This document shows, piece by piece, positions 4,423 through 63,480 of a DNA stretch of 64,000 bases. This DNA is from Saccostrea cucullata (taxonomy: Eukaryota). The position numbers and the translations under genes are program-made. Each line of letters begins with the position of its first letter. The first letter of the stretch is position 1. The stretch is from the NCBI RefSeq assembly GCF_032062105.1, contig NW_026939872.1:1-64000 (forward strand), written 5' to 3'. The notes under the pieces were generated by a model. The model was not told the origin of the DNA, searched no databases, and saw nothing but the letters and a program-made list of their open reading frames with translations.

Positions 4423-4766
4423 GTACACAGTACACATAAATAATTAAATAAGAAGAAAACATTTGATTTTCTTGAAGACTTGATGCAAATAATTTTATTC
4501 TTAAATATCATAAAATTTGTTCATGTTTTTATAGATGATATATATAAAATCACAGGATGGATTTCATGTTTTTCATTAATATTTTACCAAAATATCATTT
4601 AGTGTTGTAAAGATTAATAAGATTGCCTGCAAAAGGTAAAATTAATAAATCATTAAAAAATCTACAATCTCTGAATATTGTCAAAATGGGATATTTATCT
4701 AATCTAAAATGTACTTTCAACGAATGGCCTATCCATTGGTGTTATCATACTTTATTATTATTTTAG

Positions 4767-7089: not shown

Positions 7090-8723
7090 ATTCCAGCAGA
7101 ATTATGATTGAAAGACATGAACAGGACATGACAAATACATTTGTTGAAATAAGAGCTTTAGAGAGAGCAAAACAACTATTAGAGGAGAATAGTTATGTTA
7201 TCATAAAGGGTAACCCTGGCTCGGGGAAAACAACACTTGCTAAATGGTTATTAAAGATATTAATGGATAATGGAAAACGCCCACTTCAGCTCTTTAAGGT
7301 CTCTAAACTTTATGGCAGAGTGACAGCAGATGATAACATTGCAGTCTTCATAGACAATCTGTTTGGTGAATTCTCGTTTTCAAGTACTGAGTTCAACGAA
7401 TTTATCAATAAAAAAGAATTAATCGAATCTGTTTTAAAATCTTGCGAGAACAGATCGGGAAATGTTTTACTTTTGACAATCAGGAATGATATTTACATGG
7501 AAGTGGTCGAGAAACAAAAGTCCAATCCCTTCTTCTGTACCTCTGTGACCGATTTATCAAGTGGTGAATATGCTTTACAAACGAACGAAATAGAAATGTT
7601 TCTCAAAAAATATGGTTTAACTGCAGAAGGCAAGGATGAAGATATGAAAGAAAAACCCTCTGAATTATATCGAACACTGGGATTTCCTCAGTGTTGTAGC
7701 TTAGCACGTGAAAATCCAGAGTTTGGAAAAAATATTTTAACTTTTTTTAATGATCCTCATCTGTATCTTAAAGACTACATTGACACCCAGATAAAAGAAA
7801 AACATGCTAAAACTGCTGTACTTATATACATATTACTGAAAGGTGGTCAAGTGGAAGCGGCGATCTTAGAAAATCCAAAGGATCGGGAAGCTAAAATTGT
7901 TGCTTTAGGAATGCTTGATTTAGGGCGTTCATCATTTGGCCAATTTCAAAAGAGCATTTATTCATATAAAGGTTTCTTAACAAAACATGACAAAATAAAT
8001 AATGCGTTCGTGTTTTCGCACAGTTCTGTTCAGGAGGCACTATTCAAAGAGATGTTTGTTGCATTTCCAGAGGATATAACACGCAATTGTCATCATTCCT
8101 TGCTTCGGAGTTTAACCACAAATATAAATCCAAAAAGTACACAGAATGTCGTAGAGAAGGAAATGTTTGAAATTGTCGCCAGTCGGATCGAACAAATTTT
8201 GAAGAAAGGTTCAGACTCAGGATTCCGTTCGGTATCTGTTTTGGAGCTTTGGAATGATTCAGACTTTTACAATCATGTTCTCAAAAATGAGTTATGTATT
8301 GAATATATTATAAAACAGGTCGATTCCAAAGGAAATGGAATGATAGTACATTTCGCAAAGGCAGGGAATATAGATTGGGTTCGTAAACTGCTGCAGATCT
8401 CAGATGAATCACAAAAGTATCGCTCGCTAAATGCTGCATCTGCAGAAAATCAACAAAGCGCTGTTAGGATTATTTTATCTAGCAGAGTGAAATCTGATCT
8501 AACAACTTGCTTTCACGCAATACATGGTGGAAATGTGGACCTATTCATGGAATTATGCGAATCAGTAGACGCACTTCAAACTTCTTTCTCTCTTCATCCA
8601 AATTGTTCCAACACCAACAACAGTTTACTTCACGAGGTTTGTTCAATGGGGCAATTACGATTTGTGGAACCTTTGTTGAGTCGTTATCCAAAACTTAAGG
8701 ACATAAAAAAACAATTTCGGTGA
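7090..8723 (+). CDS. Gene 1 exon 4, 5' part: nSTAND3-type STAND NTPase, helical/winged-helix region and first ankyrin repeats
   Basis: TAG acceptor at 7087-7089 is in frame (DSSRIMIERH). Walker A GNPGSGKT, Walker B AVFIDNLFG, sensor-1 LLTIR, GxP motif GFPQCC, WHD-like FSHSSVQE. Confidence 0.85.
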
Positions 8724-8730
8724 AACAGCA

Positions 8731-11700
8731 ATGCATTCTGCTGCACAATCTGGAAATATCATTGTCTTCAATCTTCTATTAGAAGCCGGTTTAAATCCTT
8801 TAAATAGAAATTATAAAATGGAAACTGTTCTGACATGCGCTGTTAAACATGGAAAACTATCCATGGTAAAATTCTTGGTAAAACAATACCCAAGTTTATT
8901 GCACTACCATAGTTATTACCGTGGAACCACAATTTTACATCTGGCGGCCTTATCTGGAAATGTTGATCTTTTTGAATTTCTTACGGAACAGTACGAAAAT
9001 CTCTCGACCACACTTAAAAAACCAAATATAAGCGATCGAGATGAAGATGGCCTAAACGTATTACAATACGCATGTTCTGCTGGCCATCTTCAAATCAGTA
9101 AATTTTTAATATTTAAATATCCCCAGCTGCTTTCTGAGAAAGACAATTACGGAGAAGACGTGCTATACAAAGCAGCAGCAGGGGGTAATGTTGATTTGTT
9201 TCAATTCCTAATGAAAAAAGGATTGGATATGGAAAGCACAGCAAAAAACGGGAATAATGTATTGCATTCCTCTTTATACACAGATAAAGAAGACGTGTGT
9301 AGGTTCTTAGTTAACAACTTTCCCGACTTCATAAACAAGAGAAACAATGCGGGATGGACGGCCTTGCATTGTGCATATGAGGGTGGAAATGTCGGGCATT
9401 TAACTTTCCTTTCCGATAAAGGTTTGGATATCGATGCATTAACCAATTGTGGGAAATGTTCCCTTCATATTGCATGTTATAGTGCTAATTATGATGTAAG
9501 CAGGTATTTAGCTGAGAACTATACAAAATTTCTACATATTATTGATAAAAGAGGACACACAGTTTTGAATGATGCAAGCTTTGGAGGAAGCGTAGATATT
9601 TTCAAGCTTTTGATAACTAAAGGTTTAGACATCAACTGTGTAGACCACGACGGAAAGACAGTTCTTCATATCTGCTGTTCTAAGGGAAGAAAAGAAATGT
9701 GCGAATATCTGGTCGAGAATTTCCCAACTTTACTCGATATTAAAGATATCAATGGCTATACAGTTTTACACGATGCTTGTATTGGTGGAAGGGTTGATGT
9801 GGTGGATTTTCTGGTCACTAAAGGCATTGACATCAAAGCCGTGACAAACATTAAAACTTTGAATGAACACACCTATCCAAAAAATAGAGAAATGTCTCAG
9901 TCTTTGAAGAAATTTAAAAATATCAATGTCCTAGGAGGGAAAACGGTTTTACATATAAGTTGTTTATACTGTAGAGGACAGATATGTGAGTATTTGGTCC
10001 AACGTTACCCCCAGTTGATGGAGGTCAAGGACAATGCTGGTAACACAGCCTTACATGATGCATGTCTGGGTGGAAATGTTGGTATTTTGTCATTCCTTCT
10101 TAGAAAAGGTATGGATATCAATGCCTTAACGACCATTGGTAATTCAGTCCTTCATGCTTCATGCATCGGAGCTAAATATCATGTATGTGAGTATTTAGTT
10201 AACAACTTCCCACACTTACTGAATATTATTAACAAAGATGGTTACAAATGTTTGCACAGCTCAGCCGCTGGAGGTAACGTTGACATTTTGAAACTTTTAT
10301 TACGAAAAGGCATGGATATAAATTCCGTCGTAAAAAGTGGAAGAACAGTTCTAGGGATAAGCTGCAGTTTTGCTCGGTCAGAAATGTGTTATTTTCTTTC
10401 CGAAAATTTTGCCCATTTGAAAGACATCAAGGATAATGAGGGTCAAACCGCGTTACATGATGCATGTTGGGGTGGAGATGTGAATATTTTTACTTTTCTT
10501 CTTGAGAAAGGTTTAGATATCAATGTTTTGACAGACAGGAGAGAAACACTACTTCATATTGCATGTGAAAGTGGTAAATACTCCATATGTGAGTATCTTA
10601 TCTGCAACCACTCACACTTACTTAATCATAAGGATATTTATGGCTATACAGCTTTGCATTTAGCAGCGTCAAGTGGTAATATAAATGTCGTAAAACTTCT
10701 GAAAGAGAAAGGAGTGGATATAATGTCTACAGGTCTAAATGGTAAAACTGTATTGCATCTTTCAAGCATGAATAGTAGAAAAGAAATGTGCAAATATATT
10801 CTTGAACATTATCCTGAGCTCAAGGATACTAGGGATGAAGATGGTCACACAGCCCTTCATGATGCGTGTGAGGGTGGAGATGTGGACACTGTGTCGTTTT
10901 TACTTGACAGAGGTTTTGATATCAATGCATTGACGAATACTGGTGAGACTGTCCTACATTCTGCATGTTTCAATAGCAATTATTGTGTTTGCATGTTTTT
11001 ACTTGAGAATCATCCCCATTTACTTAATGTAAAAGACAATGGTGGAAACTCAGTAATGCACGACGCAGCGTCAAGAGGACATGTCAATATTTTAAAGAGT
11101 TTGATAACGAAAGGACGAATATCAATCAACTCACTAGAGAAAAACGGCAAGACCATTCTACATTTAGCCTGTCAATTTGGTAGAAAAGATATGTGCAAAT
11201 ATCTTATCCATAATTTTCCCCATTTAATGAAAATCTATGACATTGATGGTTATACCGCATTGCACGAAGCTTGTGCTAGTGGTGATGTGCCAATTTTTTC
11301 GATTCTTCTAGATAAAGGTATGGATATAAACGAGTTAGACAAATGGGGTTATTCTGTTCTTGACATCGCATGTTCAAATGGTAGATATAATATGTGCAAA
11401 CATTTAGTTAACAAATATAAAGAGTTACTACATATTCCACACCTTAATGGTTTTACAACTTTGCATAGCACGGCTTTAGGAGGCAATGTGGATATCCTTA
11501 AATTTCTGATACGAAAAGGAGTAGAATTCAACCCTGATATAGATGGGAAAACGGTTTTACATGTATGTTGTCTTCAGGGTAAGCAGGAGATGTGTGAGTA
11601 CCTGGTTGAGAATTATTCTTATTTAAAAGATGTTAAAGATAATTATGGTCATACGGCCTTGCACGACGCCTGCATTGGAGGAAAAGTAGGGATGGTCTGT

Positions 11701-11850
11701 TATCTTCTTAGCAAAGGGATGAATGTGAACGCTCTAACAAATTCTGGGCAATGTGTCTTACATCTGGCATATTACAATGGAAAGAAAGATGTATTTCATT
11801 ATTTAGTCAGCAACCATCCTCATTTAATCTTATGTTTATTTAAACATTAA
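8731..11850 (+). CDS. Gene 1 exon 4, 3' part: array of roughly 30 ankyrin repeats (separated from the 5' part by a 1-nt frameshift)
   Basis: 1039-aa ORF of GxTALH/GKTVLH repeats. Removing one A from 8705-8711 gives the continuous repeat LKDIKNNFGETAMHSAA. Confidence 0.9.
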   Translation: MHSAAQSGNIIVFNLLLEAGLNPLNRNYKMETVLTCAVKHGKLSMVKFLVKQYPSLLHYHSYYRGTTILHLAALSGNVDLFEFLTEQYENLSTTLKKPNISDRDEDGLNVLQYACSAGHLQISKFLIFKYPQLLSEKDNYGEDVLYKAAAGGNVDLFQFLMKKGLDMESTAKNGNNVLHSSLYTDKEDVCRFLVNNFPDFINKRNNAGWTALHCAYEGGNVGHLTFLSDKGLDIDALTNCGKCSLHIACYSANYDVSRYLAENYTKFLHIIDKRGHTVLNDASFGGSVDIFKLLITKGLDINCVDHDGKTVLHICCSKGRKEMCEYLVENFPTLLDIKDINGYTVLHDACIGGRVDVVDFLVTKGIDIKAVTNIKTLNEHTYPKNREMSQSLKKFKNINVLGGKTVLHISCLYCRGQICEYLVQRYPQLMEVKDNAGNTALHDACLGGNVGILSFLLRKGMDINALTTIGNSVLHASCIGAKYHVCEYLVNNFPHLLNIINKDGYKCLHSSAAGGNVDILKLLLRKGMDINSVVKSGRTVLGISCSFARSEMCYFLSENFAHLKDIKDNEGQTALHDACWGGDVNIFTFLLEKGLDINVLTDRRETLLHIACESGKYSICEYLICNHSHLLNHKDIYGYTALHLAASSGNINVVKLLKEKGVDIMSTGLNGKTVLHLSSMNSRKEMCKYILEHYPELKDTRDEDGHTALHDACEGGDVDTVSFLLDRGFDINALTNTGETVLHSACFNSNYCVCMFLLENHPHLLNVKDNGGNSVMHDAASRGHVNILKSLITKGRISINSLEKNGKTILHLACQFGRKDMCKYLIHNFPHLMKIYDIDGYTALHEACASGDVPIFSILLDKGMDINELDKWGYSVLDIACSNGRYNMCKHLVNKYKELLHIPHLNGFTTLHSTALGGNVDILKFLIRKGVEFNPDIDGKTVLHVCCLQGKQEMCEYLVENYSYLKDVKDNYGHTALHDACIGGKVGMVCYLLSKGMNVNALTNSGQCVLHLAYYNGKKDVFHYLVSNHPHLILCLFKH

Positions 11851-15909: not shown

Positions 15910-18725
15910 ATCATATGCATTCATCTCCGATCATTTCTCCAAAAATATAATAAAACACCTGCCTGTCTTCATTTAAACGTGCAGATTGAAATACTGTTTG
16001 ACCTTTATTGTCTTTGACTTCAATTTAATGCGGATAATTAGTGGCAAGGAATTCACATGAATCAAATTTACCTGTGCGACATGCAATATGAAGAACGCTT
16101 TCTCCATCATTTGTCAGTGCATCAATATCCAAACCTTTTTCTAAGAGGAACGAAATTAATTTTTTGTCTCCTTTAACACATGCAGAGTGTAATACTGTGT
16201 ACCCCTTATTGTCTTTGATATCAATTAATTTTGGAAAATTAGTGACGAAGAATCTACATGCATCATACTTACCATTTAAACATGCAGATTGGAGAACACT
16301 TTCTCCATCATTTGTCAGTGCATCAATATCCAAACCTTTTTCTATCAGGAAAGAAATCAATTTTCTGTCTCCATTTGCACATGCACAGTGTAAAGCTGTG
16401 TATCCTTGATTGTTTTTTATATCAATTAATTGTGGATAATAAGTGACAATGAATTCACATGCATTATAATTACCAAATAGACATGCAATATGAAGGACAC
16501 CAATTACCTCATTTGTCAGTGCATTAATATCCGATCCTTTCTTAATGAGAACGGAGATCACTTTTCTGTCCCCATTTACACATGCAAAGTGTAAAGCTGT
16601 AAACCCTTCATTGTTTTTGACATCAATTTCATGTGGAAAATTTGAGAAAAGGAATTCACATACATCATATCTACCCACACGACATGCAATATGAAAGATA
16701 TTTTTCTCCGTTAATTGTCAGTGCATCAATATCCAATCCTTTTCCTCCTATTAGATAAGCAATCAATTGTTTGTTTACACTAGCACATGCAGAGTGTAAT
16801 ACTGTGTTTCCTTTATTGTCTTTGACGTCAATTAAATGTGGATAATTATCGACAAAGAACTCACATGCATCATACCTACCACATAAACATGCAATATGAA
16901 GGACAGTTAAACCATCATATGTCAGTGCATTAATATCCAAACCTTTTTCAATCAGAAATGATATCAGTTTTTTTTTCTCCACTAACACATGCAGAGTGTA
17001 ATGCTGTGAACCAAGCGTTGTTTTTCATGTCAATTAATCGTGGATAATTATCTACTAGGTAGCTGCTTATACTGATATCCCCAATTTCAGATGCATAATG
17101 CAACACAGTGTCGCCATTTCTAGATCTAATATCTTTCAAAATAGGATATTTTTCAATCAAAAGCTGTACTAAATGAGTTTGTCCCGAGACACAAGCCTCT
17201 TGGATTAAACTGTGATAAGTATTAGCCCTTACAATTGATAAACAAGTTTGATTCAAATCTACAGACTTACAGATTTTCAATACCAAATCTAAATTACCAC
17301 TTCGTACTGCGTGGAAACAAGCATTTAAATCACAATATATATCTTCCCTTAAAATACGATTGGCGATTTGTACATGATTTTTTCTACTCGCGGCATTTAG
17401 GGATCTATATTTCTGAATTTTATCACAGCTATGTTGTAACAAGTGTTGCACCCAACCAATTTGTCCTGATTTTGCAAAATGCACTAGCATAGAGTTACCA
17501 TTTGAATCCAACCTTTCCTGAAAGCGGTCACTACAGACCTGATCTTTTAAGACATATTCAAAAAATGCATCGTCTTTCCATAACTCTAACAAAGAAATGG
17601 ATTCATATTCATCAGGTGATCCATCTCTCAAACTTTGATTTATTCTACTAGAAACAATTGCAAACAATTCTGCATCAGCCAAAATGTTTCTGCATTTTTG
17701 ATGCTCAGCTGTTGTCAATCTTTGAAGCAAGGTATGGTGACAGTTTAGAATTGTTTCCTCAGGAAGAGTGACAATAAGAATATGGAATAAAATATCTTGT
17801 ACGGAGCTATGGGAAAAGGAATACGAATCGTTAATTTTATCGTACATTTTTAAAAAAAACCTTCAAAAATATGAAAACTTTCGTGGAATTCACCTATTAA
17901 AAGGGGACTTAATTCAAGCATTTTTAATGCAATGGATTTCATAATCCGGTCTTTCTGATCAGAGAACAGCGAGGAATGCACATTTCCACCTTTCAACAGA
18001 AGGTATATCAACACTGCCGTTTTAACAGCTTTTTCTGTTATCAGGGTTTCCATATACTTTTTTAGGAAAAGAGAGGGACTACGGACAAATTTTGGAAGAT
18101 CACTTCCGAGGTCAGGATTCTCATGTGCTAGTCTACAACATTGTGGAAATCCCAAAGGTAAAAAATGCTCGGACTGTTTAAAGTTCATATCTTCTTTTAT
18201 ATCTCGAAGAAGATTATATTTGTTGAGAAACATAGTAAATTCTTCAGATTCTAAGGCATATTCACCAATTGATAAATAGATCTCAGATGAGACGGCACTT
18301 TTTGTTTAGCGGCAATTTCCATATAAATATCGTTTCTGACTGTTAAAATAAGGATATTTCCCATTCCACTATTGTTTGGCTTCACAAGACATTCTATAAC
18401 GTTTTTCTTATTTAAAAAATCGTTCAAGTTATAGAAAACGACGATTCCCCGAATGCATTATCAATAAGTACTGCCATGTTGTCAAACGGCGACACCCGTC
18501 CGTAGAGTTTGGACATTTTAAAGATTTGAAGAGGACGATTTCCTCCATCCATGCAAATCTTCAACAAGCATTTGGCTAATGTCGTCTTCCCGAATCCAGG
18601 AACACCTTTAATTACCACGTATCTGTTTTCCTCTAAAAGTTTTTTTGCTCTGTTAAATGCCCGGGTTTTAACAAGGATTTTCTCCGTTTCCTTATGATGA
18701 TCGTTGACCATAACCATTGTTGTTT
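15910..18725 (-). pseudogene. Gene 2 exon 4: disrupted nSTAND3 NTPase plus ankyrin repeats
   Basis: Collinear with gene 1 (GVPGFGKT, AVLIDNAFG, GFPQCC, FSHSSVQD). Frameshifts near 18425, 18280, 17850, 16970 and 16690. An in-frame TAA at 16025-16027 is followed by more ankyrin sequence (IEVKDNKGQTV). The acceptor was placed by homology (ETTMVM vs DSSRIM); an alternative in-frame acceptor gives an exon start at 18746. Confidence 0.85.
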
Positions 18726-20079: not shown

Positions 20080-21338
<1,259 letters not shown>

Positions 21339-21656: not shown

Positions 21657-22054
21657 CTGAAAATATATATTTATTTTAATACACTCAAAATAGTATAATT
21701 TAAAATTGATTATGAACATTTGAGAGTTTAAAATAAATGTAAATAGGAAAAGGAGAATATAAAAGGAAAGCTGGTTTTTTTTTCAAAAAACAAACGATAA
21801 AGGTATGAAAACTGAACTCTGCTTGGATAATGTAAGGAATTTTATCGCACATATTTTTTTTCAATAGATTTCCATAACAAAATATCCAATCCTTCCAGTT
21901 GAAACATAAGCAGTAGATCTACCTTTTCACAATATTACACAGCCCAAAAAAATCTGTCGCTGCTTTCTGTTCCATATTCTTTGAAGAGAGTATAAAATAA
22001 TTCAAAATAACCAGTATTTAAGTAAAATGAGCCTCTATTTGAAAGTATATGTAC

Positions 22055-22682
22055 CTGAAAATTTAGACACAGATGAATGTAGATCTTCAAGAACCCCAAG
22101 TCGGTTTATGTATTTATGCTCATGTTCAGGATCCATGGAACATGTTTTTATTTCTTTCACAGACTCCTGGTAGACAGTAGACATCCCTAGATAGCGCTCT
22201 AATTCAACAACGATATCCCGGATGTTCCGCCATTCCTGACTAAACTCTGAGTCAGAAAGAAATATATCGGCAGAATGGCCTTCGTATTTGTTCCTAAGAA
22301 GACGAATCCGTTCGATATTTGCGGCGACACTTCTATTAGCGGGGTCTGGATTCTCGCCCCAACCTTTAGAATGTGGAGGTATTTTACTGACATTCCGAAG
22401 AATGATGTACACGATAGATATATCAAGGTCTGAATAGTCTCCCCAATACTGATTTGTTAGTGAGGGGAAAATGATGTCATTTTGTGATGGATTAAGAGGG
22501 TTGCGTTTTTTGTTTTTCTTGAAATCATCAGTCCATTCTTTGACTTTCTTGGATAAATCATACGGTGGAATTTCCTTTTTAAGAATTTCACGTAATACAT
22601 CAGTACATGGTCCCAGTATGAGCCTCGCCAGCTGAGCGGTGTTTGTCGTCTCTGGTGTCGATGTGTACTTCGATAACGACAT
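22055..22682 (-). CDS. Gene 2 coding exon 1: DZIP3-type HEPN domain (intact ORF)
   Basis: About 80% amino-acid identity to gene 1 exon 1 by manual count; RNKYEGH motif; donor AG|GTACAT; 628 nt. Confidence 0.85.
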
Positions 22683-22759: not shown

Positions 22760-23395
22760 TGCATGAAGAAGGATATGGAGCTAACAAACGGTATTTAATC
22801 TCAATGTCCATTAAACAGTATACAAAAAAAGAGCAGAGCAAACACGGACCTCCGAAATATCAGAGGTGGGATCAGGTGCCATGGAGGAGTGAGCATCTCC
22901 TGCCGACCGGTCACACCCGCCGTGTGCTCGTTGTCAGGATCAGGAAAAAATCTGTCGTCAATTCAGTGTATAAATAATGGACTAACTATTGGAATGATAA
23001 ATTGTCTTTGCTGACAAGGTTATTGTATCCACCATAGAACTTACGAAATGATGCATTTAAACGAGACTGCTGATATTCTTGTTTCATCAACTTGCTTGTC
23101 AATAATTTACCTCGTTTAAGAAATTGTTCATACGTAGAGCATTCTCTTGCGTATCGACTCAACTGATATATATATACTCCGTATGCAGGTGATGAAGGTA
23201 TATTGTGGCATAAGTAAGGGAAGTTGACGATAGAAAAGTTAAAGTCATCAAGTTTATCATAAAGCTTCGTTGTTATATTACCATTAGCGTCTTTTGCAAA
23301 CGAGTAAAATATCCAAATATGAAGCAGAAGTGTGGGACTCTGTGGTATCTTTTATTTCAAGCTCACCATGATATATCGTATCGACTTACGAATGG
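22760..23395 (-). mobile_element. 3' fragment of a Penelope-like retroelement
   Basis: Minus strand matches the RT C-terminal part (ELEIKDTTES, YDKLDDFNFSIVNFPYL) and carries the conserved tail at 22836-22929. Confidence 0.7.
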
Positions 23396-24131
23396 ACTGT
23401 ATATGTATATAAAACGATGCTAAGAATATATTACATTAGTAATTTCACAGTTTTATTTGTATTACTTGAACTTTGACTAATTACTTCATAATACTACAAT
23501 AGCAGGCATCATACTAAGGAAATGTTGACTTCATCAATACTGTTGATGTCATCATTTCATCAACTTATTTTCAATAGCTTGCCACTTTCATGAAATTGTA
23601 GAGCATGTACTAACGACAACTGACAATTGTTGCTATCATAAATTCTTCTCTATGATTTGGAGGATATTCCATTAGTGTTCTTTCTCAGCTATTCAGATAT
23701 TCTTTTGTCATATATGTAATTTCTTAATGATAAGAGATTTCTTTTAAAAAAAATCGTTCCATGCTGAAATATTTTCGAAAGTTTCAAAGATTTGCTTAAC
23801 TAATGAGATGAATTTTAGTCTGACAAATTCACAAGTTTGTATTTAGATATAAAACATTACATTTTTAGCAATAAAGCAGCCAAAAAAAATATATGACATT
23901 GTTATACCTTTAAAAATTTGTTCCTTTACAAATCTTTACGAAAAAAGTCTAACATTTTTAAATGTTTTGCTGAGCGGGCATTACAAAATCGATGTTGGAC
24001 CGTTCGCAGAGATATTGAACCGCTTACATCACAGAATGGGCGGAGCTTAATCTCATTTTCTTTCGTTGGTGTTAAATAGTGACAGACATTATGTTACATA
24101 ACAGAATACAAAAAAATGAAAGGTATAACAA

Positions 24132-34077: not shown

Positions 34078-36489
34078 ACTGTTGCTCGTTAGGACTTAAT
34101 GCCTCGGGATTTGTTTATAACTTTATTTGTATAATTACTTAAAAGCTCTTTCTTGTTCCTTCTATCAAAGAAACACACCTGTCCATCAATATACTTAACT
34201 AGTGTCAAAAGTCAATTATTGTTAACTCTTAATCTTACAAATATCTATGTCCATCATAATTTTTTTCAGTTTTTGGAGGCCCAACGTTCTACCGGCCACA
34301 TCAAACACGATCAAGTCCCTTAAGATATTGTTGGATTCATGTTTGTTATTAACCATCGTCTTCAATAAATTCTGAAACCTGATTTACCAATTCTTGACTT
34401 TATTTTGGAAGACCATAAGGAATACGGCACCTCTACCCTTTACATTTTATTCAGGCCCACAGCGCCACTGCTTCGTTATACCCGCCAACATTCCTTCTCC
34501 CCAGTTTACATTCAACAACAGATTAAGTCCAGGAATTACTTTACAACTTATGACGGAACATCTTACTGGTTATACATATACTGGTTACACATACATTGTG
34601 ATTTTATATGATCCTCCCCAATACTAGAAGAACTCCAAGGAAATGAAGAATTTTAGGAGTCTACGCCGCATATGAAAGGGATCAACTCAGAGAGCAGAAC
34701 CCTGGGGCCCGTTTTACAAAGGTCGAGGCTATTTGGTACCGCCTGGAAGGTGGCGGGAGTTATCTTTCCATAAGTGTACACGAGTTATCTCGCATTACTG
34801 TGACGTATAATGAAACCATATTAATTCGTTCTTTGTTTGGTTCATGCAAATGTAAATATGTAAAACGGAAAGAAACTCAGTGTGTGTGAGGGAGGGTGTG
34901 GGTGTTGGGGGGGGGGGGGGGGGGGGGGCGGGGTCGACATAACAATTTTAATTATATTCAATAGAAAACAAAGGTGTTTTACAGACCATCCTCCAAAAAA
35001 ATTAATTAAAAAATATTAGAAAGAAATTGACGTTAAGTACTATAAATAATTTATATTTATAAGTACATATTTGCCCTGCTTAGAGATCACATCCTGAATA
35101 AATTGGGAGAGGCGTGCGATTACCAGACTTACAGATACCCCCCCCCCCCCCCACTCACACACACAGATAAACCCAGTCAATGCAAGACGAGGAATTTAAT
35201 GAACGGAATGCGTCTTTTATATGTCGATTTAAAATTTTTTGCATATATTGGTTTGAAGTAGGCATAAATGGCATAATTAAACAAAAACGTTCACAGCAAT
35301 ACTTTAACGGCATATGATATAAATTATATTTCAATTAATCATCTATAATTAGATATTTTTTCAAACATAAACTTTTTATTCGAACTGTTTTAACAATTTT
35401 CAGTATTTAATTACTATAAGCACTTGAAATCATTTTATTTTCTATTTGGCATTTTAAAAAGTATCATTATCGCACACAAAATATTTTCGAGGAAAATGTC
35501 AATTTATTCCACATCTCGAGATCAATACAATAAGCCAGAACAGTTTGAAATTGTTTTTTTTAAGCTATGTGTAAATGCAGCGAAAAAATTACGGAACATA
35601 GAGCGAAAGATATTGATTTAATTCGTGTGTCATATCAAAGTTTTTCGCGAAGTAGCTGGATGAATGATAGATGTACATGTATATTGAAATGTTTCTTCCG
35701 ACTATTATCAAATATAGGGCGTCATGAAAATGTGTCAATAAATGAGAACATTTCTCTAAGGCATGGCTTGGCAATGAACTTTCTTGCCTGCAACTGAAAT
35801 AAAAAGAAAAAGACCTCAAGAATAAAAAAAGAAAGCATACGTATGAATGTGATCCTAAACATGATATAGGCCTCGGAAGCAAATTGAAAGGGGGGCTAAT
35901 TGAAAGGGGGGGTAGGCTGAACCAACAAAAAAGGTAAACTCCAATTTTCAATGCATGCCTATATTTAGTATATATTTGCAAAAAAGTGTGGGGGAGGGGG
36001 CTAAGCCTCCCCTCAACCCCCTGGTTCCGACGCCTATGCATGAAGAAAACAGACAGAAACGGATAGACAGGTGTGACATACAATAATGAATCACCCTAAT
36101 TCTTACAGGTACTAACTTACCTGTATGAGATATCAGAATATGAAGTTACCTGTAAAATCTTCAAGTTGGTTCATTTATTAAATATGATAAGCATCAGGTT
36201 ATGAAGCTGCCTATGTAGTAGTAATATGAATCAGGATCTGATAATTTCTATCTCTACAACAGATACCGGCGTAAAAAGCCAACTACCTGTTACAGGGACT
36301 GCGTGTGTATATGTAAAAGGTATAATTCAGAAAGGAACCTTCATACATCAATTAGGTACTGCTAAAGGGTATGGAATTGCACTTAAGCACCCTAATCAAG
36401 TACCAGATATTTAACCATTCTTGATTCAATTAAATAAAACATTGTGCCTCGCAGATACATATACATGAATAAACCGAACCGATCTTTTA

Positions 36490-40466: not shown

Positions 40467-40664
40467 ATCTAGGTCAAAGGGGCATAACTCTGTCAAAAAT
40501 GGTGCATTCGTACCCAAAACACATTTATTTGATAAATCTGTGTACAAAAATTCCATTTCAGTATGTACAAAGGTTGTTAAGAAAATAAATAGAAACTAAA
40601 TGGACAGACGGACAGCAGTAAAGCATTATACAATCCCGTCTTCTAAGGGGAGGGGGGGGGGCAA

Positions 40665-40900
40665 AATATATAGTGACCTTTGGTCAACATATTGATGTAC
40701 AGTGTACAATGTAAGTTTACTTCTGGTCAACTAATAATTAACGTTTTAAGTGACTTTTGATCTACCTATTAATGTAAAATTAAAATATAAGGTGACCTCT
40801 AGTCCCTCTAGTGATGTACAGTATAAGTTGACATCTGGTCCCTTTTGTGTTTTATAAAGTGACCTCGGAATCTGCTCCCCCTATTGATGTAAAATATAAA
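40665..40900 (-). repeat. Inverted, decayed copy of the 36-bp minisatellite
   Basis: AATATAAGGTGACCTCTAGTCCCTCTAGTGATGTACAGTATAAG is approximately the reverse complement of the 38447-39230 unit. Confidence 0.7.
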
Positions 40901-41459
40901 TCCAACAACAGACTCATGGAACACATTGCTCACAGAGCATTGTGAATTGCAAAAAAAGCAAAAATACATTTGGAATTAAAGAGCTTTAATGCATAAGTGG
41001 TCATTAACTACCCTGAAAAGGCAAGGGGAGTATGATTTGAACAAAATCAAATCTACAGTAAGAATATTTATCTATATTTTTGAAGGTGACTTTTTCCCTA
41101 CATTGTGGTCCCATCTTATCCATGGGGATCATGATTTGAACAAACTAGACTACTCTAGACTATCTTATAATGATCCCAAATGGATTTCATATTTCCTGAC
41201 CCTTGGTTCTTGAAAAAAAACTCTTTAATTATGCGATTAATTTTTAGCTAATTCATAATTGTCTCCCCTTCATTTCAACAAACTTGAATCTCCTATACCT
41301 AGGGATTCTCTGAGCCAAATATGGCTAAATTTGGCTCCTTAGGTCTAAAAAAGAAAATGGTATTGTTAAAGGTTTATGACAAAGGCAACGCCTACAACAT
41401 GACCCAGCGCCTGTTAGAAACATGCATCTTTATAATGTGGTACCTGTACGAGGTAAGTA

Positions 41460-42455
41460 TCTTACGACTTTTCAACTTTATACACAACCATTCCCCACGA
41501 TAAATTAAATCCAAGCTTTTTGATATCATTGACAGCTGCTTTTTCAATAAAAATGGAACTCGTAAATATACTTACCTGGTCATTGGTCAATTGCAAAAAT
41601 ATTTTATTAAAACACATTCTGATTGCACACACAAGTACTCTGAAGTTGACATCAAAGAGATGCTTGAGTTTCTGATTGACAATATCTATGTAGTTTTGGA
41701 GACCAGGTATTCCAACAATCTACTGGAATTCTAATGGGTACCAATTGCGCTCCGCTATTAGCGGACCTATTTTCTATATTCATATGACGCAGAATATGTG
41801 CAAAATCTAATGCATGAAAAGAAGAAAACACTTGCTGTGGCCTTCAAATCGACATTTAGATATATCGATGACGTATCGTCAATAAACAATGGTCATTTCC
41901 ATTTCTACATCGATACGATATGTCCTGGTGAGCTTGAGATAAAAGATACTACAGCGTCTAACACATCTGTTTCATACTTGGATATTTTACTTGAAAAAGA
42001 CATTAATGGTAATCTAACAACCAAGCTATATGATAAACGTGATGACTTTAACTTTTCTATCGCCAGCTTCCCTTACACATGCAGCAATATACCTTCATCG
42101 ATACCTTGGTCGATACAATGGCCTTGTCAGCAAATATAATTTATCATTGAGACAAATGCTGACTTACGTTTTGCATACTGTACAATTATGGACTTCAGTG
42201 TAAGTCGATATGTGGATATAAAGACTCATGATAATTGAGATTGACCGAAGACACGGAAAGTGATAGCGACCGAGCCTGCTGTCACAATGACGGCGAGCAC
42301 ACGGCAGGTGTGACCGGTCAGCGGGGGATGCTCACTCCTCCATGGTACCTGATCCCACCTCTTATGTTTTGGAGGTCCGTGTTTGCTCTGCTCCTATTTT
42401 GTATTGTATTATAGACTTTGATATTAAATACTCTTCGTTATCTCCATATCTTTCT
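41460..42455 (+). mobile_element. 5'-truncated Penelope-like retroelement (RT core; possibly Naiad/Chlamys-type)
   Basis: YDFSTLYTTIPH, QQSTGILMGTNCAPLLADLFL, FRYIDD and SYLD motifs with stop/frameshift damage, followed by the conserved 3' tail. Confidence 0.8.
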
Positions 42456-42461
42456 TAAATA

Positions 42462-44340
42462 CGTTACCTGTTACAGGTAGGTAGCTTTAAATTTGGTACA
42501 TCTTACAGGTCGGTGTTAAAATAAGACATCTGTAAGAAGTATGAGGGTTAAAGTTCTAGAATTTCATTGTGTAAATATCTGGTACCTGTTACAGGTCGGT
42601 GTACTAATAACTGGTACCTGTTTCAGGTCGGTATGTTATAATCAGACATCTATAAGAGTAAGAAGGGTTAAAAAACTAGCATTTGATTGTGTAATAATCT
42701 GGTACCTCGTACAGGTCGATGAGCTGAAATCTGGTACCTGTTACAACTAAGTATGCTATAATCAAACATCTGTAAGAGGTAGGAAGGTTAAAGTACTAGC
42801 ATTTAATTGTGTAATAATCTGGTACCTGTTACAGGTCGGTGAGCTGAAATCTGCTACCTGTTAAAGGTCGGTGAGCTAATATATCTGGTACCTCTTACAG
42901 GTCGATATGTTATAATCAGACATCTGAAAGAGTTAGAAGGGTTAAAGTACTAAAATTTTATTGTGTAAATATCTGGTACCTGTTACAGGTCGGTGAGCTA
43001 AAATCTGGTACCTGTTACATGTCGGTATGCTATAATCAGACATTTCTAAGAGTTTGGAGGGTTAAAGCAATAGAGTTTTATTGTGTAAATGTCTGGTATC
43101 TCTTACAGGTCGGTGACCTAAAATCTGGTACCTCTTACAAGTCGGTATGCTATTATCAAACATCTGTAAGACGTAGAAGGGTTAAAGTACTAGCATTTGA
43201 TTGTGTTATGATCTGGTACCTCTTACAGGTCGGTGAGCTGAAATCTGGTACCTGTTACAAGTCAGTATCCTATAATTAGACATCTGTAAGAGTAAGAAGG
43301 GTTAAAATATTAAAATTTTATTGTGTAAATATCTGGTACCTGTTACAGGTCGGTGAGCTGAAATCTGGTACCTGTTACAAGTCGGTATGTTATAATCAGA
43401 CATCTGTAAGAGGCAGGAGGTTTTAAGTAGAAACATTTGATTGTGTAGTAATCTGGTACCTCTTCCAGGTCGATGAGCTGAAATCTGGTACCTGTTACAA
43501 GTCGGTATACTATAATTAGACATCTGTAAGAGGCAGGAGGGTTGAAGTACTAGCATTTGATTGTGTAAAAATCTGGTACCTCTTACAGGTCGGTGAGCTA
43601 AAATCTGGTACCTCTTACAAGTCGGTATGCTATTATCAAACATCTGTAAGACGTAGAAGGGTTAAAGTACTAGCATTTGATTGTGTTATAATCTGGTACC
43701 TCTTACAGGTCGGTGAGCTGAAATCTGGTACCTGTTACAAGTCGGTATGCTATAATTAGACATCTGTAAGAGGCAGGACGGTTGAAGTACTAGCATTTGA
43801 TTGTGTAATAATCTGGTACCTCTTACAGGTCGGTGAGCTAAAATCTGGTACCTCTTACAAGTCGGTATGCTATTATCAAACATCTGTAAGACGTAGAAGG
43901 GTTAAAGTACTAGCATTTGATTGTGTTATAATCTGGTACCTCTTACAGGTCGGTGAGCTGAAATCTGGTACCTGTTACAAGTCGGTATGTTATAATCAGA
44001 CATCTGTAAGAGGCAGGAGGTTTTAAGTACAAACATTTGATTGTGTAAAAATCTGGTACCTCTTTCAGGTCGTTGAGCTGAAGTCTGGTACCTGTTACAA
44101 GTGGATATGCTATAATTAGACATCTGTAAGAGGCAGGAGGGTTGAAGTACTAGTATTTGATCGTGTAATAATCTGGTACCTCTTACAGGTCGGTGAGCTG
44201 AAATCTGGTACCTGTTACGAGTCGGTATGCTATTATCAGAAATCTGTAAGAGGCAGAAGGTTTAAGTACTAGAATTTAATTGCATAAATATCTGGTACCT
44301 GTTACAGGTCGGTGAGCTGAAATGTAGTACCTGTAAAAGA
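42462..44340 (-). repeat. 120-bp tandem array in the right foldback arm
   Basis: Reverse complement of the 36490-38420 array. Confidence 0.95.
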
Positions 44341-46659
44341 TCGGTTCGGTTTATTCATGTATATGTATCTGCGAGGCACAATGTTTTATTTAATTGAATC
44401 AAGAATGGTTAAATATCTGGTACTTGATTAGGGTAGCTTAAGTGCAATTCCATACCCTTTAGCAGTACCTAATTGATGTATGAAGGTTCCTTTCTGAATT
44501 ATACCTTTTACATATACACACGCAGTCCTTATAACAGGTAGTTGGCTTTTTACGCCGGTATCTGTTGTAGAGATAGAAATTATCAGATCCTGATTCATAT
44601 TACTACTACCAAGGCAGCTTCATAACCTAATGCTTATCATATTTAATAAATGAACCAACTTGAAGATTTTACAGGTAACTTCATATTCTGATATCTCATA
44701 CAGGTAAGTTAGTGCCAGTAAGAATTAGGGTGATTCCTTATTGTATGTCACACCTGTCTATCCGTTTCTGTCTGTTTTCTTCATGCATAGGCGTCGGAAC
44801 CAGGGGGTTGAGGGGAGGCTTAGCCCCCTCCCCCACACTTTTTTGCAAATATATACTAAATATAGGCATGCATTGAAAATTGGAGTTTACCTTTTTTGTT
44901 GGTTCAGCCTACCCCCCCCCCTTTCAATTAGCCCCCCTTTCAATTTGCTTCCGAGGCCTATATCATGTTTAGGATCACATTCATACGTATGCTTTCTTTT
45001 TTTTTATTCTTGAGGTCTTTTTCTTTTTATTTCAGTTGCAGGCAAGAAAAGTTCATTGCCAAGCCATGCCTTAGAGAAATGTTCTCATTTATTGACACAT
45101 TTTGATGACGCCCTATATTTGATAATAGTCGGAAGAAACATTTCAATATACATGTACATCTATCATTCATCCAGCTACTTCGCGAAAAACTTTGATATGA
45201 CACACGAATTAAATCAATATCTTTCGCTCTGTGTTCCGTAATTTTTTCGCTGCATTTACACATAGCTTTAAATAAAACAATTTCAAACTGTTCTGGCTCA
45301 TTGTATTGATCTCGAGATGTGGAATAAATTGACATTTTCCTCGAAAATATTTTGTGTGCGATAATGATACTTTTTAAAAATGCCAAATAGAAAATAAAAT
45401 GATTTCAAGTGCTTATAGGAATTAAATACTGAAAATTGTTAAAACAGTTCGAATAAAAAGTTTATGTTTGAAAAAATATCTAATTGTAGATGATTAATTG
45501 AAATATATATCATATGCCGTTAAAGTATTGCTGTGAACGTTTTTGTTTAATTATGCCATTTATGCCTACTTCAAACCAATATATGCAAAAAATTTTAAAT
45601 CGACATATAAAAGACGCATTCCGTTCATTAAATTCCTCGTCTTGCATTGACTGGGTTTATCTGTGTGTGTGAGTGGGGGGGGGGGGAGTGGGGGTGGTAT
45701 CTGTAAGTCTGGTAATCGCGCGCCTCTCCCAATTTATTCAGGATGTAATCTCTAAGCAGGGCAAATATGTACTTATAAAAATAAATTATTTATAGTACTT
45801 AAAGTCAATTTCTTTCTAATTTTTTTAATTAATTTTTTTGGAGGATGGTCTGTAAAACACCTTTGTTTTCTATTGAAGATAATTAAAATTGTTATGTCGA
45901 CCCCGCCCCCCCCCCCCCAACACCCACACCCTCCCTCACACACACTGAGTTTCTTTCCGTTTTACATATTTACATAAGCATGAACCAAACGAAGAACGAA
46001 TTAATATGGTTTCATTATACGTCACAGTAATGCGAGATAACTCGTGTACACTTATGGAAAGATAACTCCCGCCACCTTCCAGGCGGTACCAAATAGCCTC
46101 GACCTTTTACAAAAGGACTTACATTGTACGACTTAAGACCAAATTCAATTCTTCGTATAACTTTTTATTAACTTTATATCGAAAATTAATTTTAATTTTG
46201 TTAAAAGAATATGGTAAGATATATTTACAGAAACAATTTTAAAGAGAATGATTAATTTTGCAAAATTTTACAATCATCTAAAAATTTTTGGTTTTACTCG
46301 TAAGTTCTTTTGTAAAACGGACCCCTGATACCTATATTACAAAACATCTGCCTTACATTCGATATTTGACTTGTGAAGATTTGGAAAACAAAATTTCAAC
46401 ATATATACAGCAAGTTCAGAATTTGTGACATTTAAGATCCGCTCAGGTTTTTTGAGATTTCTCTGAAAGTACATGCTTCAGAATGGCAAAGAAAAGATTC
46501 CATATGTACTTATTGTAAAATTTAGAGTATCTGTATTTTCAGGTAAATAAAGAGCAGAGTCTTTCAACTGGTTCCCAAACGCAGAAAAAAGTCATATCAC
46601 AGGATCAAGAAAGAAAAATCGTGACAGAAGAAAAACTTATGCAACAACAATAATGTTTA

Positions 46660-57099: not shown

Positions 57100-57520
57100 A
57101 TAATTTGAACAAACTTGAATCTACACTACCTGAATACGTTTCCATAAAAATATGATCATTCATGGTTTTGCTATTCATCAAAGGTTTTTTAAAAAGAATT
57201 TTCCTATACATTTCTATGTAAAACTTTGATCAGTCATTGTGGCCCCGTCCTACCCCTGGGGGTCATGTTTTAAACAAACTTGAATCAACACAATTTGAAA
57301 ATGTATCCATAGAAGTTTTAATTTCCCTGGCACAGTGGTTCTTGAGAAGATTTTTAAAGACTTTTCCTAAATATTTCTTTGTAAAACTTGGTCGGCCATT
57401 GTGGCCCCGCCCTACCCCGGGGGTATTGATTTGAACAAACTTGATTTTACACTACCTGAGGATGATTCCACATGAGTTTCATCATTCATGGCCCAGTGGT
57501 TCTTGAGAAGAGTTTTTTTT
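57100..57520 (-). repeat. Decayed 166-bp Cg170-type satellite units
   Basis: TTTGAACAAACTTGAATCTACACTACCTGA is the reverse complement of part of the unit in 20340-21250. Confidence 0.75.
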
Positions 57521-61308: not shown

Positions 61309-62009
61309 CGTTTAATCGAAGAAATGTGAATGAGCAAAAGGTAAAGTTGGGTTCCAACGGAGTTAAGTGATCGTAACCTCTAACTCCACTAAGAGACATT
61401 TTCTTATGTATATTTGCGATAAATTCTACTGCTGCTAATTGTTGGTGTATCTGACAATTATTTTAATTAATGTCATATATATGGGAACTGCTGAAACAGA
61501 TTGTTTATCTTAAAGGGCCGGGGGGAGTATAAAGATTTTGAAAGGTTTTCTTTATTTACTTCGATATTTACAGTGCAGGGAACTAATTATGTTACATAAA
61601 CCAGCATCAGGATCAGCATAAGTAGGATCAGGATAGAACTAGCATCAGCATCAGCATTTCAAAAAACAGCATTACTTGGATCAGCATCAGCAAGCAAAGG
61701 ATAGAACTAGCATTGACCAAAGTTAAAACAAACAAAGGAAAGTCATTTAATACAAATAACAAATAAAAACTAGACCTTATTTTTGTCGTTCAACAAAAAC
61801 GGAGGGCTTTTCGACCCCTGAAAATTAAGGAGCTTAAAGTGAATAGGTTATTACATAATAACATTTCAAAAGGTTCATTATGCTTCAAGTGATATCAATA
61901 ATGAAACATTACAAGTCACTATATTCATCAACAGCTACTCAAAGAGATATAACTCTTTCACGATTATTCAAAAAATGCAACAAAAAACCCGACTGTTTTT
62001 CAATTCACT

Positions 62010-63480
62010 AATGGACATTGCATGATTTCAAATTTAACTGAGAAATCTCCATAGTCAAATTTAATGTACTTATAAAACCGGAAATACTGCACATACCCAT
62101 ACCAAAATTGAAACATAAGGAGCATATAAGACCCCAAACAGGTTGACAAAGGGAGTTAACTCTTGCTCAAATATTTTTGAAAATACTTAAAAATACAAAA
62201 TTTCAGGTGTCTAAAACACGTATAAGGGATCAAAAAATGACCCCACGGACCATAATTTTTAAATTGCTCTTTTTATGCTGAACTCAAAACCGAAATCAGT
62301 TTGACGATTGAAGGATAAATAAAACAGTTATATACAAAAATCGATTTTCCGTACTGACCCCTAAAATCCCTTTTATTTTGAGAAATTTTATTTTCATGAC
62401 CTTACCACCCGAAGGCAATACTAAAGTTATTATTCATGTGAAATATCACAAGACTCGCTTGCTTCCCTTTGAAAATAATGGACATTGCATGATTTCAAAT
62501 TTAACATGGAAATCTCCGTAGACAAATTTTATGAACTTATAAAACCGGAAGTACTGCACATATCCATACCAAAATTGAAACATAGGGAGCATATAAGACT
62601 CCAAACAGGTTGACAAAGGGAGATAACTCTTGCACAAATATTTTTGAAAATACATAAAAATACAAAATTTCAGGTCTCTAAAAAACCCATAAGGGGTCAA
62701 AAAGTGACCCCACGGACCATTATTTTTAAATTGTCCTCCTTATGCTCAACTCAAAACCGAAATCAGTTTGAAGTTTGGTGGATAAATAAAAAAGATAAAT
62801 ATATAAAAGTATTTTCTGTACTGACCCCTAAAATCCCTTTTATTTAAAGAAATTTCATTTTCATGACTTAACCACCGGAAGGTAATACGGTAGTAATTAA
62901 TCATGTGAAATATCATGAGACATGCTTGCTTTCCTTTGAAAATAATGGACATTGCATGATTTCAAATTTAACATAGAAATCTCCATAGGCAATATTAAGG
63001 TACTTATAAAACCGGAAGTACTCTACATATCCATACCAAAATTGAAACATAGATGGCATATTAGACTCCAAACAGTTTGACAAAAGGAGATAACTCTTGC
63101 ACAATTATTTTTGAAAATGCTTAAAAATACAAAATTTCAGGTCTCTAAAAGTCCTTTAAGGGGTCAAAAAGTGACCCCACGGACCATAATTTTTAAATTG
63201 TTCTTCTTATGTTGAACTCAAAACTGAAATCAGTTTGAAGATTGGTTTATAAATTAAAAAGTTACAGGGCAAAAACGGTTTTCAGAGTTGACCCCAAAAA
63301 ATCCCTAAGTTTTAGGGATTTGGTTTTCATAACCTTTTCCCATGAAGACAATGCTGAATTAGTTATCAACTATAAATATTATGAAAATTGCTTGCTTTTT
63401 TCTTGAGATAATGGAACACGCATGATTCGTTTATAATATAGAAACTCCCATAGACAATTTAAAAGACATATAGAACCGGA
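62010..63480. repeat. 467-bp tandem repeat (~3.2 units), probably the internal array of a Helentron-like element
   Basis: AATGGACATTGCATGATTTC at 62010, 62477 and 62944, with a decayed copy at 63410. AACTAG plus hairpin end near 61768. Confidence 0.85.

What the first reader, a model, noticed from the sequence alone, without database searches (positions are those of the whole stretch)
34721..46104. 11.4-kb foldback transposon with ~3.7-kb inverted arms and an exact 9-bp TSD but no transposase
Seen: the arms are near-identical reverse complements, each with ~1.77 kb of non-tandem sequence followed by ~1.9 kb of 120-bp tandem repeats. The termini are GG...CC and TTTTACAAA is duplicated exactly. 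Established: very long TIRs with internal tandem arrays and 9-bp TSDs characterise Foldback/Mutator-like elements, which can promote rearrangements. Inference: this is a recently mobilised, probably uncatalogued bivalve family that disperses its own satellite DNA and carries other TE fragments as cargo.
Basis: partly seen in the sequence, partly recalled or inferred. Interest (0 to 1): 0.8.

Follow-up and report, generated by a model that had tools for sequence, protein, structure and literature searches.

The report
Young non-autonomous foldback transposon copy
This is a real, recently inserted copy of a roughly 15-locus foldback-type DNA transposon family that carries a 120-bp satellite in its long inverted arms and no transposase; it is a good mollusc example of a known kind of element, not a new kind.

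Summary
Window 34721-46104 is an 11,384-bp element. It has two inverted arms of about 3.65 kb. Each arm has a 1,768-bp unique domain (98.6-98.7% identical between arms) followed by a 120-bp tandem array. The termini are GGTCGAGG...CCTCGACC, and an exact 9-bp duplication, TTTTACAAA, flanks the element.

It belongs to a family:
- The terminal 30-mer occurs at 26 places in the 1.17-Gb assembly, against 0 in the control.
- About 15 distinct loci carry 10-17-kb copies.
- All five intact pairs have exact, different 9-bp duplications.
- Copies are 98.4-98.9% identical.

Contig C21576 carries both flanks of this insertion, overlapping by exactly 9 bp. That is an empty site, so the insertion is recent and probably hemizygous.

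The 4.1-kb middle is shared by nine copies. It is a patchwork of other dispersed repeats, including a reverse-transcriptase-like fragment. Even its consensus has no open frame beyond chance. No transposase domain lies in the element. No MULE or Merlin transposase gene lies beside any related terminus.

Best reading: a non-autonomous foldback element moved in trans, most likely by a Mutator-superfamily (Foldback/Rehavkus-like) transposase. The partner was not found. The closest analogues are Tetris (Drosophila virilis) and the Rehavkus elements of Tribolium. Whether the family is already catalogued in Repbase or Dfam could not be tested.

The parts
34712..34720 (.). Left copy of the 9-bp target-site duplication, TTTTACAAA
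   Evidence: Read directly. On the empty-site contig C21576 the two flanks overlap by exactly these 9 bp.
34721..36488 (+). Left arm, unique outer domain (1,768 bp). It starts with terminus GGTCGAGGCTATTTGGTACC and contains a poly-G / poly-C internal hairpin at 34877-35167.
   Evidence: 98.6-98.7% identical to the reverse complement of 44335-46104. The terminal 30-mer has 26 genomic matches against 0 control. No Pfam domain in its frames.
36489..38372 (+). Left arm, 120-bp tandem array (13.4 units, then 154/274-bp variants). It carries 32 plus-strand copies of the 23-bp motif CCGACCTGTAASAGGTACCAGAT, two per unit.
   Evidence: TRF; motif scan with 0 expected by chance; array length varies from 5 to 39 units among copies.
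38373..42455 (.). Non-coding middle domain (4,083 bp), shared at 97.4-99.2% identity by nine copies
   Evidence: The majority consensus of the non-RT part has no frame above 112 aa (95th percentile of shuffles is 135 aa). The 85%-identity subfamily copy on C8684 has no BLAST match to the 2.9-kb non-RT part of this middle; a more sensitive search finds only ~70% repeat-fragment matches.
38435..39173 (+). 36-bp minisatellite inside the middle
   Evidence: TRF.
39405..40336 (.). Fragment of a very abundant dispersed repeat (about 80% identity to many loci). It includes 168-bp-type repeat units at 39545-40049.
   Evidence: Genome search: 12,458 first-look candidates, with hits covering query positions 226-1157. 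Similar to the window's own array at 26499-27091.
41457..42136 (+). Frame-broken fragment of a retroelement polymerase (FRYIDDV motif)
   Evidence: Translation. No Pfam hit, even at E = 10. Atlas feature search points to mollusc and other animal clusters, some with PF26215 HTH_animal and RVT_1 (a lead only). The same repeat occurs elsewhere in the window (23191-23396) and outside the element on C3246.
42456..44334 (-). Right arm, 120-bp tandem array (about 15.6 units) with 29 minus-strand copies of the 23-bp motif
44335..46104 (-). Right arm, unique outer domain, ending ...CCAAATAGCCTCGACC
   Evidence: a second hit on the same contig in opposite orientation.
46105..46113 (.). Right copy of the 9-bp target-site duplication, TTTTACAAA

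Best explanation
Window 34721-46104 is one copy of a young, low-copy, non-autonomous foldback-type cut-and-paste DNA transposon family with about 15 insertion loci. SHOWN: it inserted here with a 9-bp staggered cut. The sequenced material still holds the unoccupied site. It encodes nothing recognisable. INFERRED: it is moved in trans by a DDE transposase that recognises the shared terminus GGTYGAGGCTATYTGGTACC. That enzyme may also bind the 23-bp motif repeated about 30 times per arm in mirror orientation. The fixed 9-bp duplication and the kilobase-long arms with internal tandem arrays make a Mutator-superfamily enzyme of the Foldback/Rehavkus type the most likely one (about 0.55 for this part; the stated confidence of 0.85 is for the non-autonomous foldback transposon reading as a whole). 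The arrays expand and contract by unequal exchange (5-39 units per arm), which explains the 10-17-kb size range. The middle is junk that the founder copy had acquired.
For: Architecture, termini and duplication. Family: the terminal 500 bp matches about 20 full-length places at 91-96% identity, in inverted pairs 10-16 kb apart on eight contigs. The 30-mer has 26 matches against 0 control. The 20-mer has 77 against 7, showing a wider set of relatives. Exact 9-bp duplications, different at each locus, occur in 5 of 5 intact pairs: TTTTACAAA, AACGATTAA, AATATTACC, CACTCCGTC, AAATTTATG. Empty site: C21576:2254-2857 matches the left flank at 96%; C21576:1639-2262 matches the right flank at 90%. Both are on the same strand and overlap by exactly 9 bp. 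Youth: middles are 98.4% identical pairwise; arms are 98.5-98.8% identical whether from the same or different copies; the tree is star-like with a median end branch of 0.0055. Non-coding; no Rfam family or tRNA. Reiterated 23-bp motif: 32 plus-strand copies in the left arm, 29 minus-strand copies in the right arm, none elsewhere. Array size variation. Literature: Tetris has the same layout, 8-10-bp duplications, a non-coding middle and no autonomous partner found (PMC4079207). Rehavkus has 9-bp duplications and long inverted termini with tandem repeats (PMC6446971; bioRxiv 10.1101/2024.12.02.626372). That preprint also cites work showing that more tandem repeats in foldback termini strengthen transposase binding and excision.
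Against: No transposase was linked to the family. None of 115 MULE-domain hits (PF10551) lies within or beside any terminus; the nearest is 27 kb from the C614 copy. These searches score only the best candidates (150 of 210). Rehavkus-type enzymes may escape PF10551. The array unit shows no significant similarity to the terminal 60 bp (321 of 1,000 shuffles score as high), unlike Tetris. The binding-site role of the 23-bp motif is therefore conjecture. C21576 matches at 96% and 90%, so it could be a paralogous site and not the allelic one. Its letters could not be fetched. A second copy tested (C614) has no empty-site contig.
Confidence: 0.85

Rival explanations
1. Same non-autonomous foldback element, but mobilised by a transposase outside the Mutator superfamily. 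Candidates are Merlin/IS1595-like enzymes (8-9-bp duplications) or an undescribed DDE clade.
For: The superfamily call rests only on duplication length and arm structure. No MULE gene is linked to the termini. The genome holds at least 103 Merlin-type DDE_Tnp_IS1595 hits. The foldback shape has arisen independently in other superfamilies, for example Galileo in the P superfamily (PMC4079207).
Against: No Merlin hit lies on any terminus-bearing contig. All five duplications are exactly 9 bp, not mixed 8 and 9. From memory, not tested: Merlin inverted repeats are short. P and hAT enzymes give 7-8 bp.
Confidence: 0.15
2. Composite element: each 3.65-kb arm is itself a mobile unit, and two of them in inverted orientation carry whatever lies between, as bacterial composite transposons do.
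For: Several contigs show single termini (C1769, C9732, C12644, C23850, C8328). In the C1775 copy, one unique arm domain lies inverted on its own.
Against: Most single termini lie within about 2 kb of a contig end, so the missing mate is an assembly break. The inner arm ends are satellite arrays with no terminus-like sequence. Nine copies share the same middle, and the 9-bp duplications flank the whole unit.
Confidence: 0.03
3. Not a transposon: an assembly fold-back chimera or a local palindromic duplication.
For: Long-read assemblers can produce inverted duplications. No read or contig bridging the junctions at this locus was recovered.
Against: The same architecture recurs at eight or more loci with different flanks and exact 9-bp duplications. 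An empty site exists. Arm sequence is present in short-read contigs from four independent runs. One contig breaks to a different flank at 34719, the element's end (record 22).
Confidence: 0.02
4. The element is autonomous: the middle or arms encode a transposase through small spliced exons or a family too divergent for Pfam.
For: Only stop-to-stop frames of 50 aa or more were scanned. Exon-level coding cannot be excluded by frame length alone.
Against: The consensus of nine copies has no frame longer than chance. The parts of the middle that were compared match other dispersed repeats. The related subfamily (C8684) lacks most of this middle, so the middle is dispensable.
Confidence: 0.03

Closest known systems
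Tetris (foldback transposon of Drosophila virilis; PMC4079207)
   Same: Long inverted arms built as outer unique domain plus a variable tandem array (220 bp there, 120 bp here). Non-coding middle domain that differs between relatives. 8-10-bp duplications. Few structurally complete copies. No autonomous partner found. Tentatively assigned to Mutator on duplication length.
   Different: The Tetris repeat shares a 37-bp stretch with the terminal domain; here the unit shows no significant similarity to the terminus. Tetris repeats also form kb-size free arrays; none were seen here. The arms here are much longer in their unique part (1.77 kb).
Rehavkus elements (Repbase; Tribolium Rehavkus-1_TC / -3_TC; PMC6446971 and bioRxiv 10.1101/2024.12.02.626372)
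   Same: 9-bp duplication. Long inverted termini carrying a variable number (2-50) of tandem satellite units. Described as foldback DNA transposons that spread satellite repeats.
   Different: Rehavkus is defined by a PHD-finger transposase; none was found here. PMC6446971 lists its hosts as arthropods and annelids, not molluscs. No sequence comparison was possible.
Drosophila Foldback (FB) elements / Mutator superfamily (MULE, Phantom)
   Same: 9-bp duplication. Arms that make up most of the element and contain tandem repeats. Most copies are non-coding. MULE duplications are 8-11 bp and their inverted repeats are long (PMC6446971).
   Different: FB arms are almost entirely short (10-31 bp) repeats (from memory). 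Here there is a 1.77-kb unique domain plus a 120-bp satellite. No MULE DDE gene is linked.
Helentron/pearl-type satellite-carrying elements of bivalves (PMC7492417, PMC8268682)
   Same: Mobile elements that carry and scatter short satellite-like arrays in bivalve genomes. Fragments of 165-168-bp-type repeats sit in this element's middle.
   Different: By general knowledge, those elements have no long terminal inverted repeats and no target-site duplication, and they move by rolling circle. This element has 3.65-kb inverted arms and an exact 9-bp duplication.

Membership tests
Foldback-type transposons (structural class) | Inverted arms make up most of the element and can pair as a hairpin | tested here: met
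   Arms of 3,652 + 3,649 bp in an 11,384-bp element (64%). Unique domains 98.6% complementary.
Foldback-type transposons (structural class) | Tandem repeats inside the arms, variable in number among copies | tested here: met
   120-bp arrays of 5-39 units per arm across ten copies.
Foldback-type transposons (structural class) | Multiple dispersed copies, each flanked by a target-site duplication | tested here: met
   About 15 loci. 5 of 5 intact pairs have exact 9-bp duplications. One empty site.
Mutator superfamily (MULE / Foldback / Phantom) | Target-site duplication of 8-11 bp, typically 9 | tested here: met
   9 bp in all five pairs. Range taken from PMC6446971.
Mutator superfamily (MULE / Foldback / Phantom) | A MULE-type DDE transposase in an autonomous member with the same termini | tested here: inconclusive
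   No PF10551 hit within or beside any of 77 terminus matches. Only 150 of 210 candidates were scored, and the two longest relatives could not be read.
Rehavkus | 9-bp duplication and long inverted termini with subterminal tandem repeats | tested here: met
   Definition.
Rehavkus | Transposase with a PHD finger, or sequence similarity to Repbase Rehavkus entries | not testable with these tools
   No Repbase or Dfam access, and no Rehavkus protein was available as a query.
Merlin (IS1595-like) | DDE_Tnp_IS1595 transposase between the termini of an autonomous member | tested here: not met
   103 PF12762 hits (all 112 candidates scored); none on a terminus-bearing contig.
Helitron/Helentron satellite carriers of bivalves | No terminal inverted repeats and no target-site duplication | tested here: not met
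   This element has both.

The most novel reading that the evidence does not exclude
The family is the visible, non-autonomous half of a still-active mollusc lineage of Foldback/Rehavkus-like transposons, or of an undescribed DDE clade that makes 9-bp cuts. Its transposase would bind the 23-bp motif reiterated about 30 times per arm. With presence/absence polymorphism and arrays ranging from 5 to 39 units, it would be a natural system for watching a satellite being born and spread by a transposon outside insects.
Probability: 0.15. Interest if true: 0.55.

Novelty: new member of a known kind. Interest (0 to 1): 0.35.

Why it matters
Foldback elements promote inversions, deletions and other rearrangements, and they seed satellite DNA. 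They are well documented in Drosophila and Tribolium. In the literature I could search, bivalve satellite-transposon links are almost all Helitron/Helentron-based. A young, polymorphic, cleanly bounded foldback family with a private 120-bp satellite adds a second route for satellite dispersal in this genome. It also gives assemblers and annotators a defined 10-17-kb hairpin-forming repeat to look out for. It does not change any concept: the architecture, the duplication length and even the missing transposase repeat what is known from Tetris and Rehavkus.

Tried and rejected
- **Array unit versus terminus.** By eye the 120-bp unit resembled the terminus (GGTACC...GGTCG). A local alignment against shuffles shows it does not: score 15 against a mean of 14, with 321 of 1,000 shuffles as high.
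- **MULE transposase (PF10551).** Checked for co-location with termini; none found.
- **Merlin transposase (PF12762).** Same check, none found.
- **The 549-aa transposase inside the C8684 copy.** It is a pogo-type enzyme (DDE_1, HTH_Tnp_Tc5, CENP-B_N). It is absent from the same-flank contig C5826, so it is a nested insertion and not this family's enzyme.
- **Interiors of diverged relatives in hand (L026/L040/L052, L027, L029, L030).** No coding capacity.
- **Exact-pattern scan of metagenome contigs for the terminus.** No match.
- **Read laying on 32721-35720.** Only short Logan contigs were available and none bridged the junction, so there is no verdict on spanning reads or on an empty site in other individuals.
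- **Rfam and tRNA scans of the element.** Nothing.
- **Pfam on the RT-like frames, even at E = 10.** Nothing.
- **Earlier notes of this scan.** Nothing relevant.
- **Literature search for a described bivalve foldback family.** None found in the held library. That is not proof of absence.
- **Second empty-site test (C614 copy).** No empty contig.
Full report
**1. What is there**

Aligning the left side of the region to the reverse complement of the right side gives one long match, 34709-38372 against 46116-42456 (91.3% over 3,698 columns). The outermost 12 positions are a chance extension through the flanking 9-mer, which is nearly its own reverse complement. The element proper runs from 34721 (GGTCGAGGCTATTTGG...) to 46104 (...CCAAATAGCCTCGACC). 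Both ends are followed on the outside by TTTTACAAA.

Each arm has two parts:
- A 1,768-bp non-repetitive outer domain, 98.6-98.7% identical between the arms.
- A tandem array of a 120-bp unit: 36489-38093 continuing with 154/274-bp variants to 38367, and 42465-44334.

The arrays differ in register and number (13.4 units plus variants, against 15.6 units). This is why whole-arm identity is lower than that of the unique domain.

Every unit carries two copies of a 23-bp motif, CCGACCTGTAASAGGTACCAGAT. It occurs 32 times on the plus strand in the left arm, 29 times on the minus strand in the right arm, and nowhere else in the 64-kb window. The number expected by chance is 0. The window holds no N.

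**2. It is a family, and it transposes**

The window is contig C22009 of a 1.17-Gb assembly of 23,869 contigs. The first 500 bp of the arm match about 20 further places over their full length at 91-96% identity. Most of them form inverted pairs 10-16 kb apart on one contig.

The terminal 30-mer, allowing up to 3 mismatches, occurs 26 times against 0 for the reversed control. The terminal 20-mer occurs 77 times against 7. This reveals older or sister subfamilies with termini GGTYGAGGCTATYTGGTACC.

In all five pairs whose ends are both intact, the flanks show an exact 9-bp direct duplication that differs at each locus: TTTTACAAA, AACGATTAA, AATATTACC, CACTCCGTC, AAATTTATG. The flanks of the single ends are all different, so the core family occupies about 15 loci.

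*Empty site.* The 600 bp left of the element match C21576:2254-2857 (96%). The 600 bp to its right match C21576:1639-2262 (90%). Both are on the minus strand, and the two matches overlap by exactly 9 bp. That is the unoccupied site with a single copy of the target. The identities fall within what another same-flank contig pair in this assembly shows (C8684/C5826, 93-99%). I read C21576 as the other haplotype. A paralogous site is not excluded, because its letters could not be fetched. A second copy (C614) has no such counterpart.

**3. Age and dynamics**

- The non-RT part of the middle is 98.4% identical pairwise among nine copies, range 97.4-99.2%.
- Arm unique domains are 98.8% identical within an element and 98.5-98.6% between elements.
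- The tree is star-like, with a median end branch of 0.0055.

The two arms of this copy group together (support 97/93). In four other copies the left arms group weakly with one another. There is thus no general homogenisation of the arms within an element. The picture is one recent burst from a founder whose arms were already nearly identical.

Array length ranges from 5 to 39 units per arm and is often unequal between the arms of one copy. This accounts for element sizes of 10-17 kb.

The 120-bp repeat was found only on contigs that carry family members or their close relatives. Satellites are often under-assembled, so free arrays are not excluded.

**4. What it carries**

Nine copies share the 4.1-kb middle (38373-42455). 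It is therefore not cargo picked up by this copy.

The parts of the middle that were compared all match other repeats:
- A 36-bp minisatellite at 38435-39173.
- About 0.9 kb (39405-40336) that matches a very abundant dispersed repeat at about 80% identity, with 12,458 first-look candidates.
- Pieces related to the 165-168-bp tandem repeats present elsewhere in the window.
- A 133-bp dispersed repeat at 40337-40469.
- A frame-broken polymerase fragment with an FRYIDDV motif at 41457-42136.

The polymerase fragment gets no Pfam hit. A protein-atlas feature search places it next to animal clusters, some carrying HTH_animal and RVT_1; this is a lead only. The same repeat lies outside the element on C3246 and elsewhere in the window.

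To ask whether the founder encoded anything, I made a majority consensus of the nine middles inside a script. I left the polymerase-like part out. The element is a DNA transposon, not a virus. Only frame lengths were printed. The longest stop-to-stop frame is 112 aa, and the 95th percentile of shuffles is 135 aa.

Twenty-three frames from the arms and middle gave no Pfam family above noise. There is no Rfam family or tRNA. In BLAST, the 85%-identity subfamily copy on C8684 has no match to the 2.9-kb non-RT part of this middle; a more sensitive search finds only ~70% repeat-fragment matches. Most of the middle is therefore dispensable, as in Tetris.

**5. Who moves it**

This was not found.
- The genome has at least 115 MULE-domain hits, many in open frames of 700-1,100 aa, and at least 103 Merlin-type hits. 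None lies within or next to any terminus match.
- The only transposase inside a family member is the 549-aa frame in C8684. It is a pogo-type enzyme sitting in a nested insertion that the same-flank contig C5826 lacks.
- The best remaining suspects are the two longest relatives, C4391:113893-130819 (16.9 kb) and C11998:37443-57432 (20 kb).

The mechanism is therefore inferred: cut-and-paste in trans by an enzyme that makes 9-bp staggered cuts. Among eukaryotic superfamilies, a fixed 9-bp duplication together with very long arms that hold tandem repeats points to the Mutator superfamily in the broad sense. This covers MULE with 8-11-bp duplications, and Rehavkus with 9 bp, long inverted termini and subterminal tandem repeats (PMC6446971; bioRxiv 10.1101/2024.12.02.626372). 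The authors of Tetris used the same reasoning (PMC4079207). Merlin (8-9 bp) is the main alternative.

The mirror-oriented 23-bp motif is a plausible reiterated binding site by analogy with Galileo and other foldback elements. I could not show any similarity between it and the terminus.

**6. Comparison and verdict**

The element works like, and looks like, a foldback transposon of the Tetris/Rehavkus kind. Membership in Mutator or Rehavkus cannot be claimed, because the defining transposase was not observed. Membership in the Helentron-type satellite carriers typical of bivalves is excluded by the inverted arms and the duplication.

In the held literature I found no described bivalve foldback family. 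Repbase and Dfam could not be queried, so 'uncatalogued' stays open. Organism names were coded. Arm sequence is present in runs of two coded organisms and in marine biofilm and seawater metagenomes.

Its interpretation is supported, with two corrections: the 'cargo' is ancestral to the family, and the satellite is so far confined to the family.

This is a solid, ordinary result: a new member of a known kind.

Read laying was given 3,000 letters. No N was filled.

Noticed in passing
window 3795-4436 (+), 7104-11847 (+), 16948-17844 (-), 22035-22679 (-): The upstream neighbourhood has open frames with HEPN_DZIP3 domains (two), an nSTAND3 NTPase followed by a very long ankyrin-repeat frame, and another ankyrin frame. 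It looks like an expanded STAND/ankyrin immune-type gene cluster.
   Followed up: partly
window 33221-34120: The stretch just left of the insertion is an extremely abundant repeat. Logan word depth is 1e5-1e6 there against about 1e2 beside it, in all four runs, with many internal joints.
   Followed up: no
window 20339-21255, 26499-27032, 57193-57517, 62009-63261: Three arrays of 161-168-bp units and one of 467-bp units. Fragments related to the first two types are embedded in the foldback element's middle.
   Followed up: partly
L038:4876-6522 (-) = G000:C8684, inside an 85%-identity relative of the element: A nested pogo-type transposon with an uninterrupted 549-aa frame (CENP-B_N, HTH_Tnp_Tc5, DDE_1). 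The contig with the same flank (C5826) lacks it. C5826 instead holds open frames of 1,393 and 442 aa, which look like a retroelement by size and arrangement; Pfam was not run on them. The two haplotypes or duplicates thus carry different nested insertions.
   Followed up: partly
L035+L047 = G000:C1775:88000-106000: A rearranged family copy. The left unique arm domain is inverted, so its terminus abuts the 120-bp array, and a 534-aa open frame that looks gag-like by eye (no Pfam scan) lies beside it. It could be an inversion or an aberrant transposition product. Unexplained.
   Followed up: partly
G000:C13650:14887-14940 and G000:C19564:33745-33798: Two related termini lie head-to-head within 54 bp. 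This may be a minimal hairpin derivative or an excision/abortive product. It could not be fetched.
   Followed up: no
window 34877-35167 (and mirror in the right arm): Inside the unique arm domain, a (TG)n-G-rich tract ending in poly-G faces a poly-C-(CA)n tract about 210 bp away. This forms a small internal hairpin. Homopolymer length differs between the arms.
   Followed up: no
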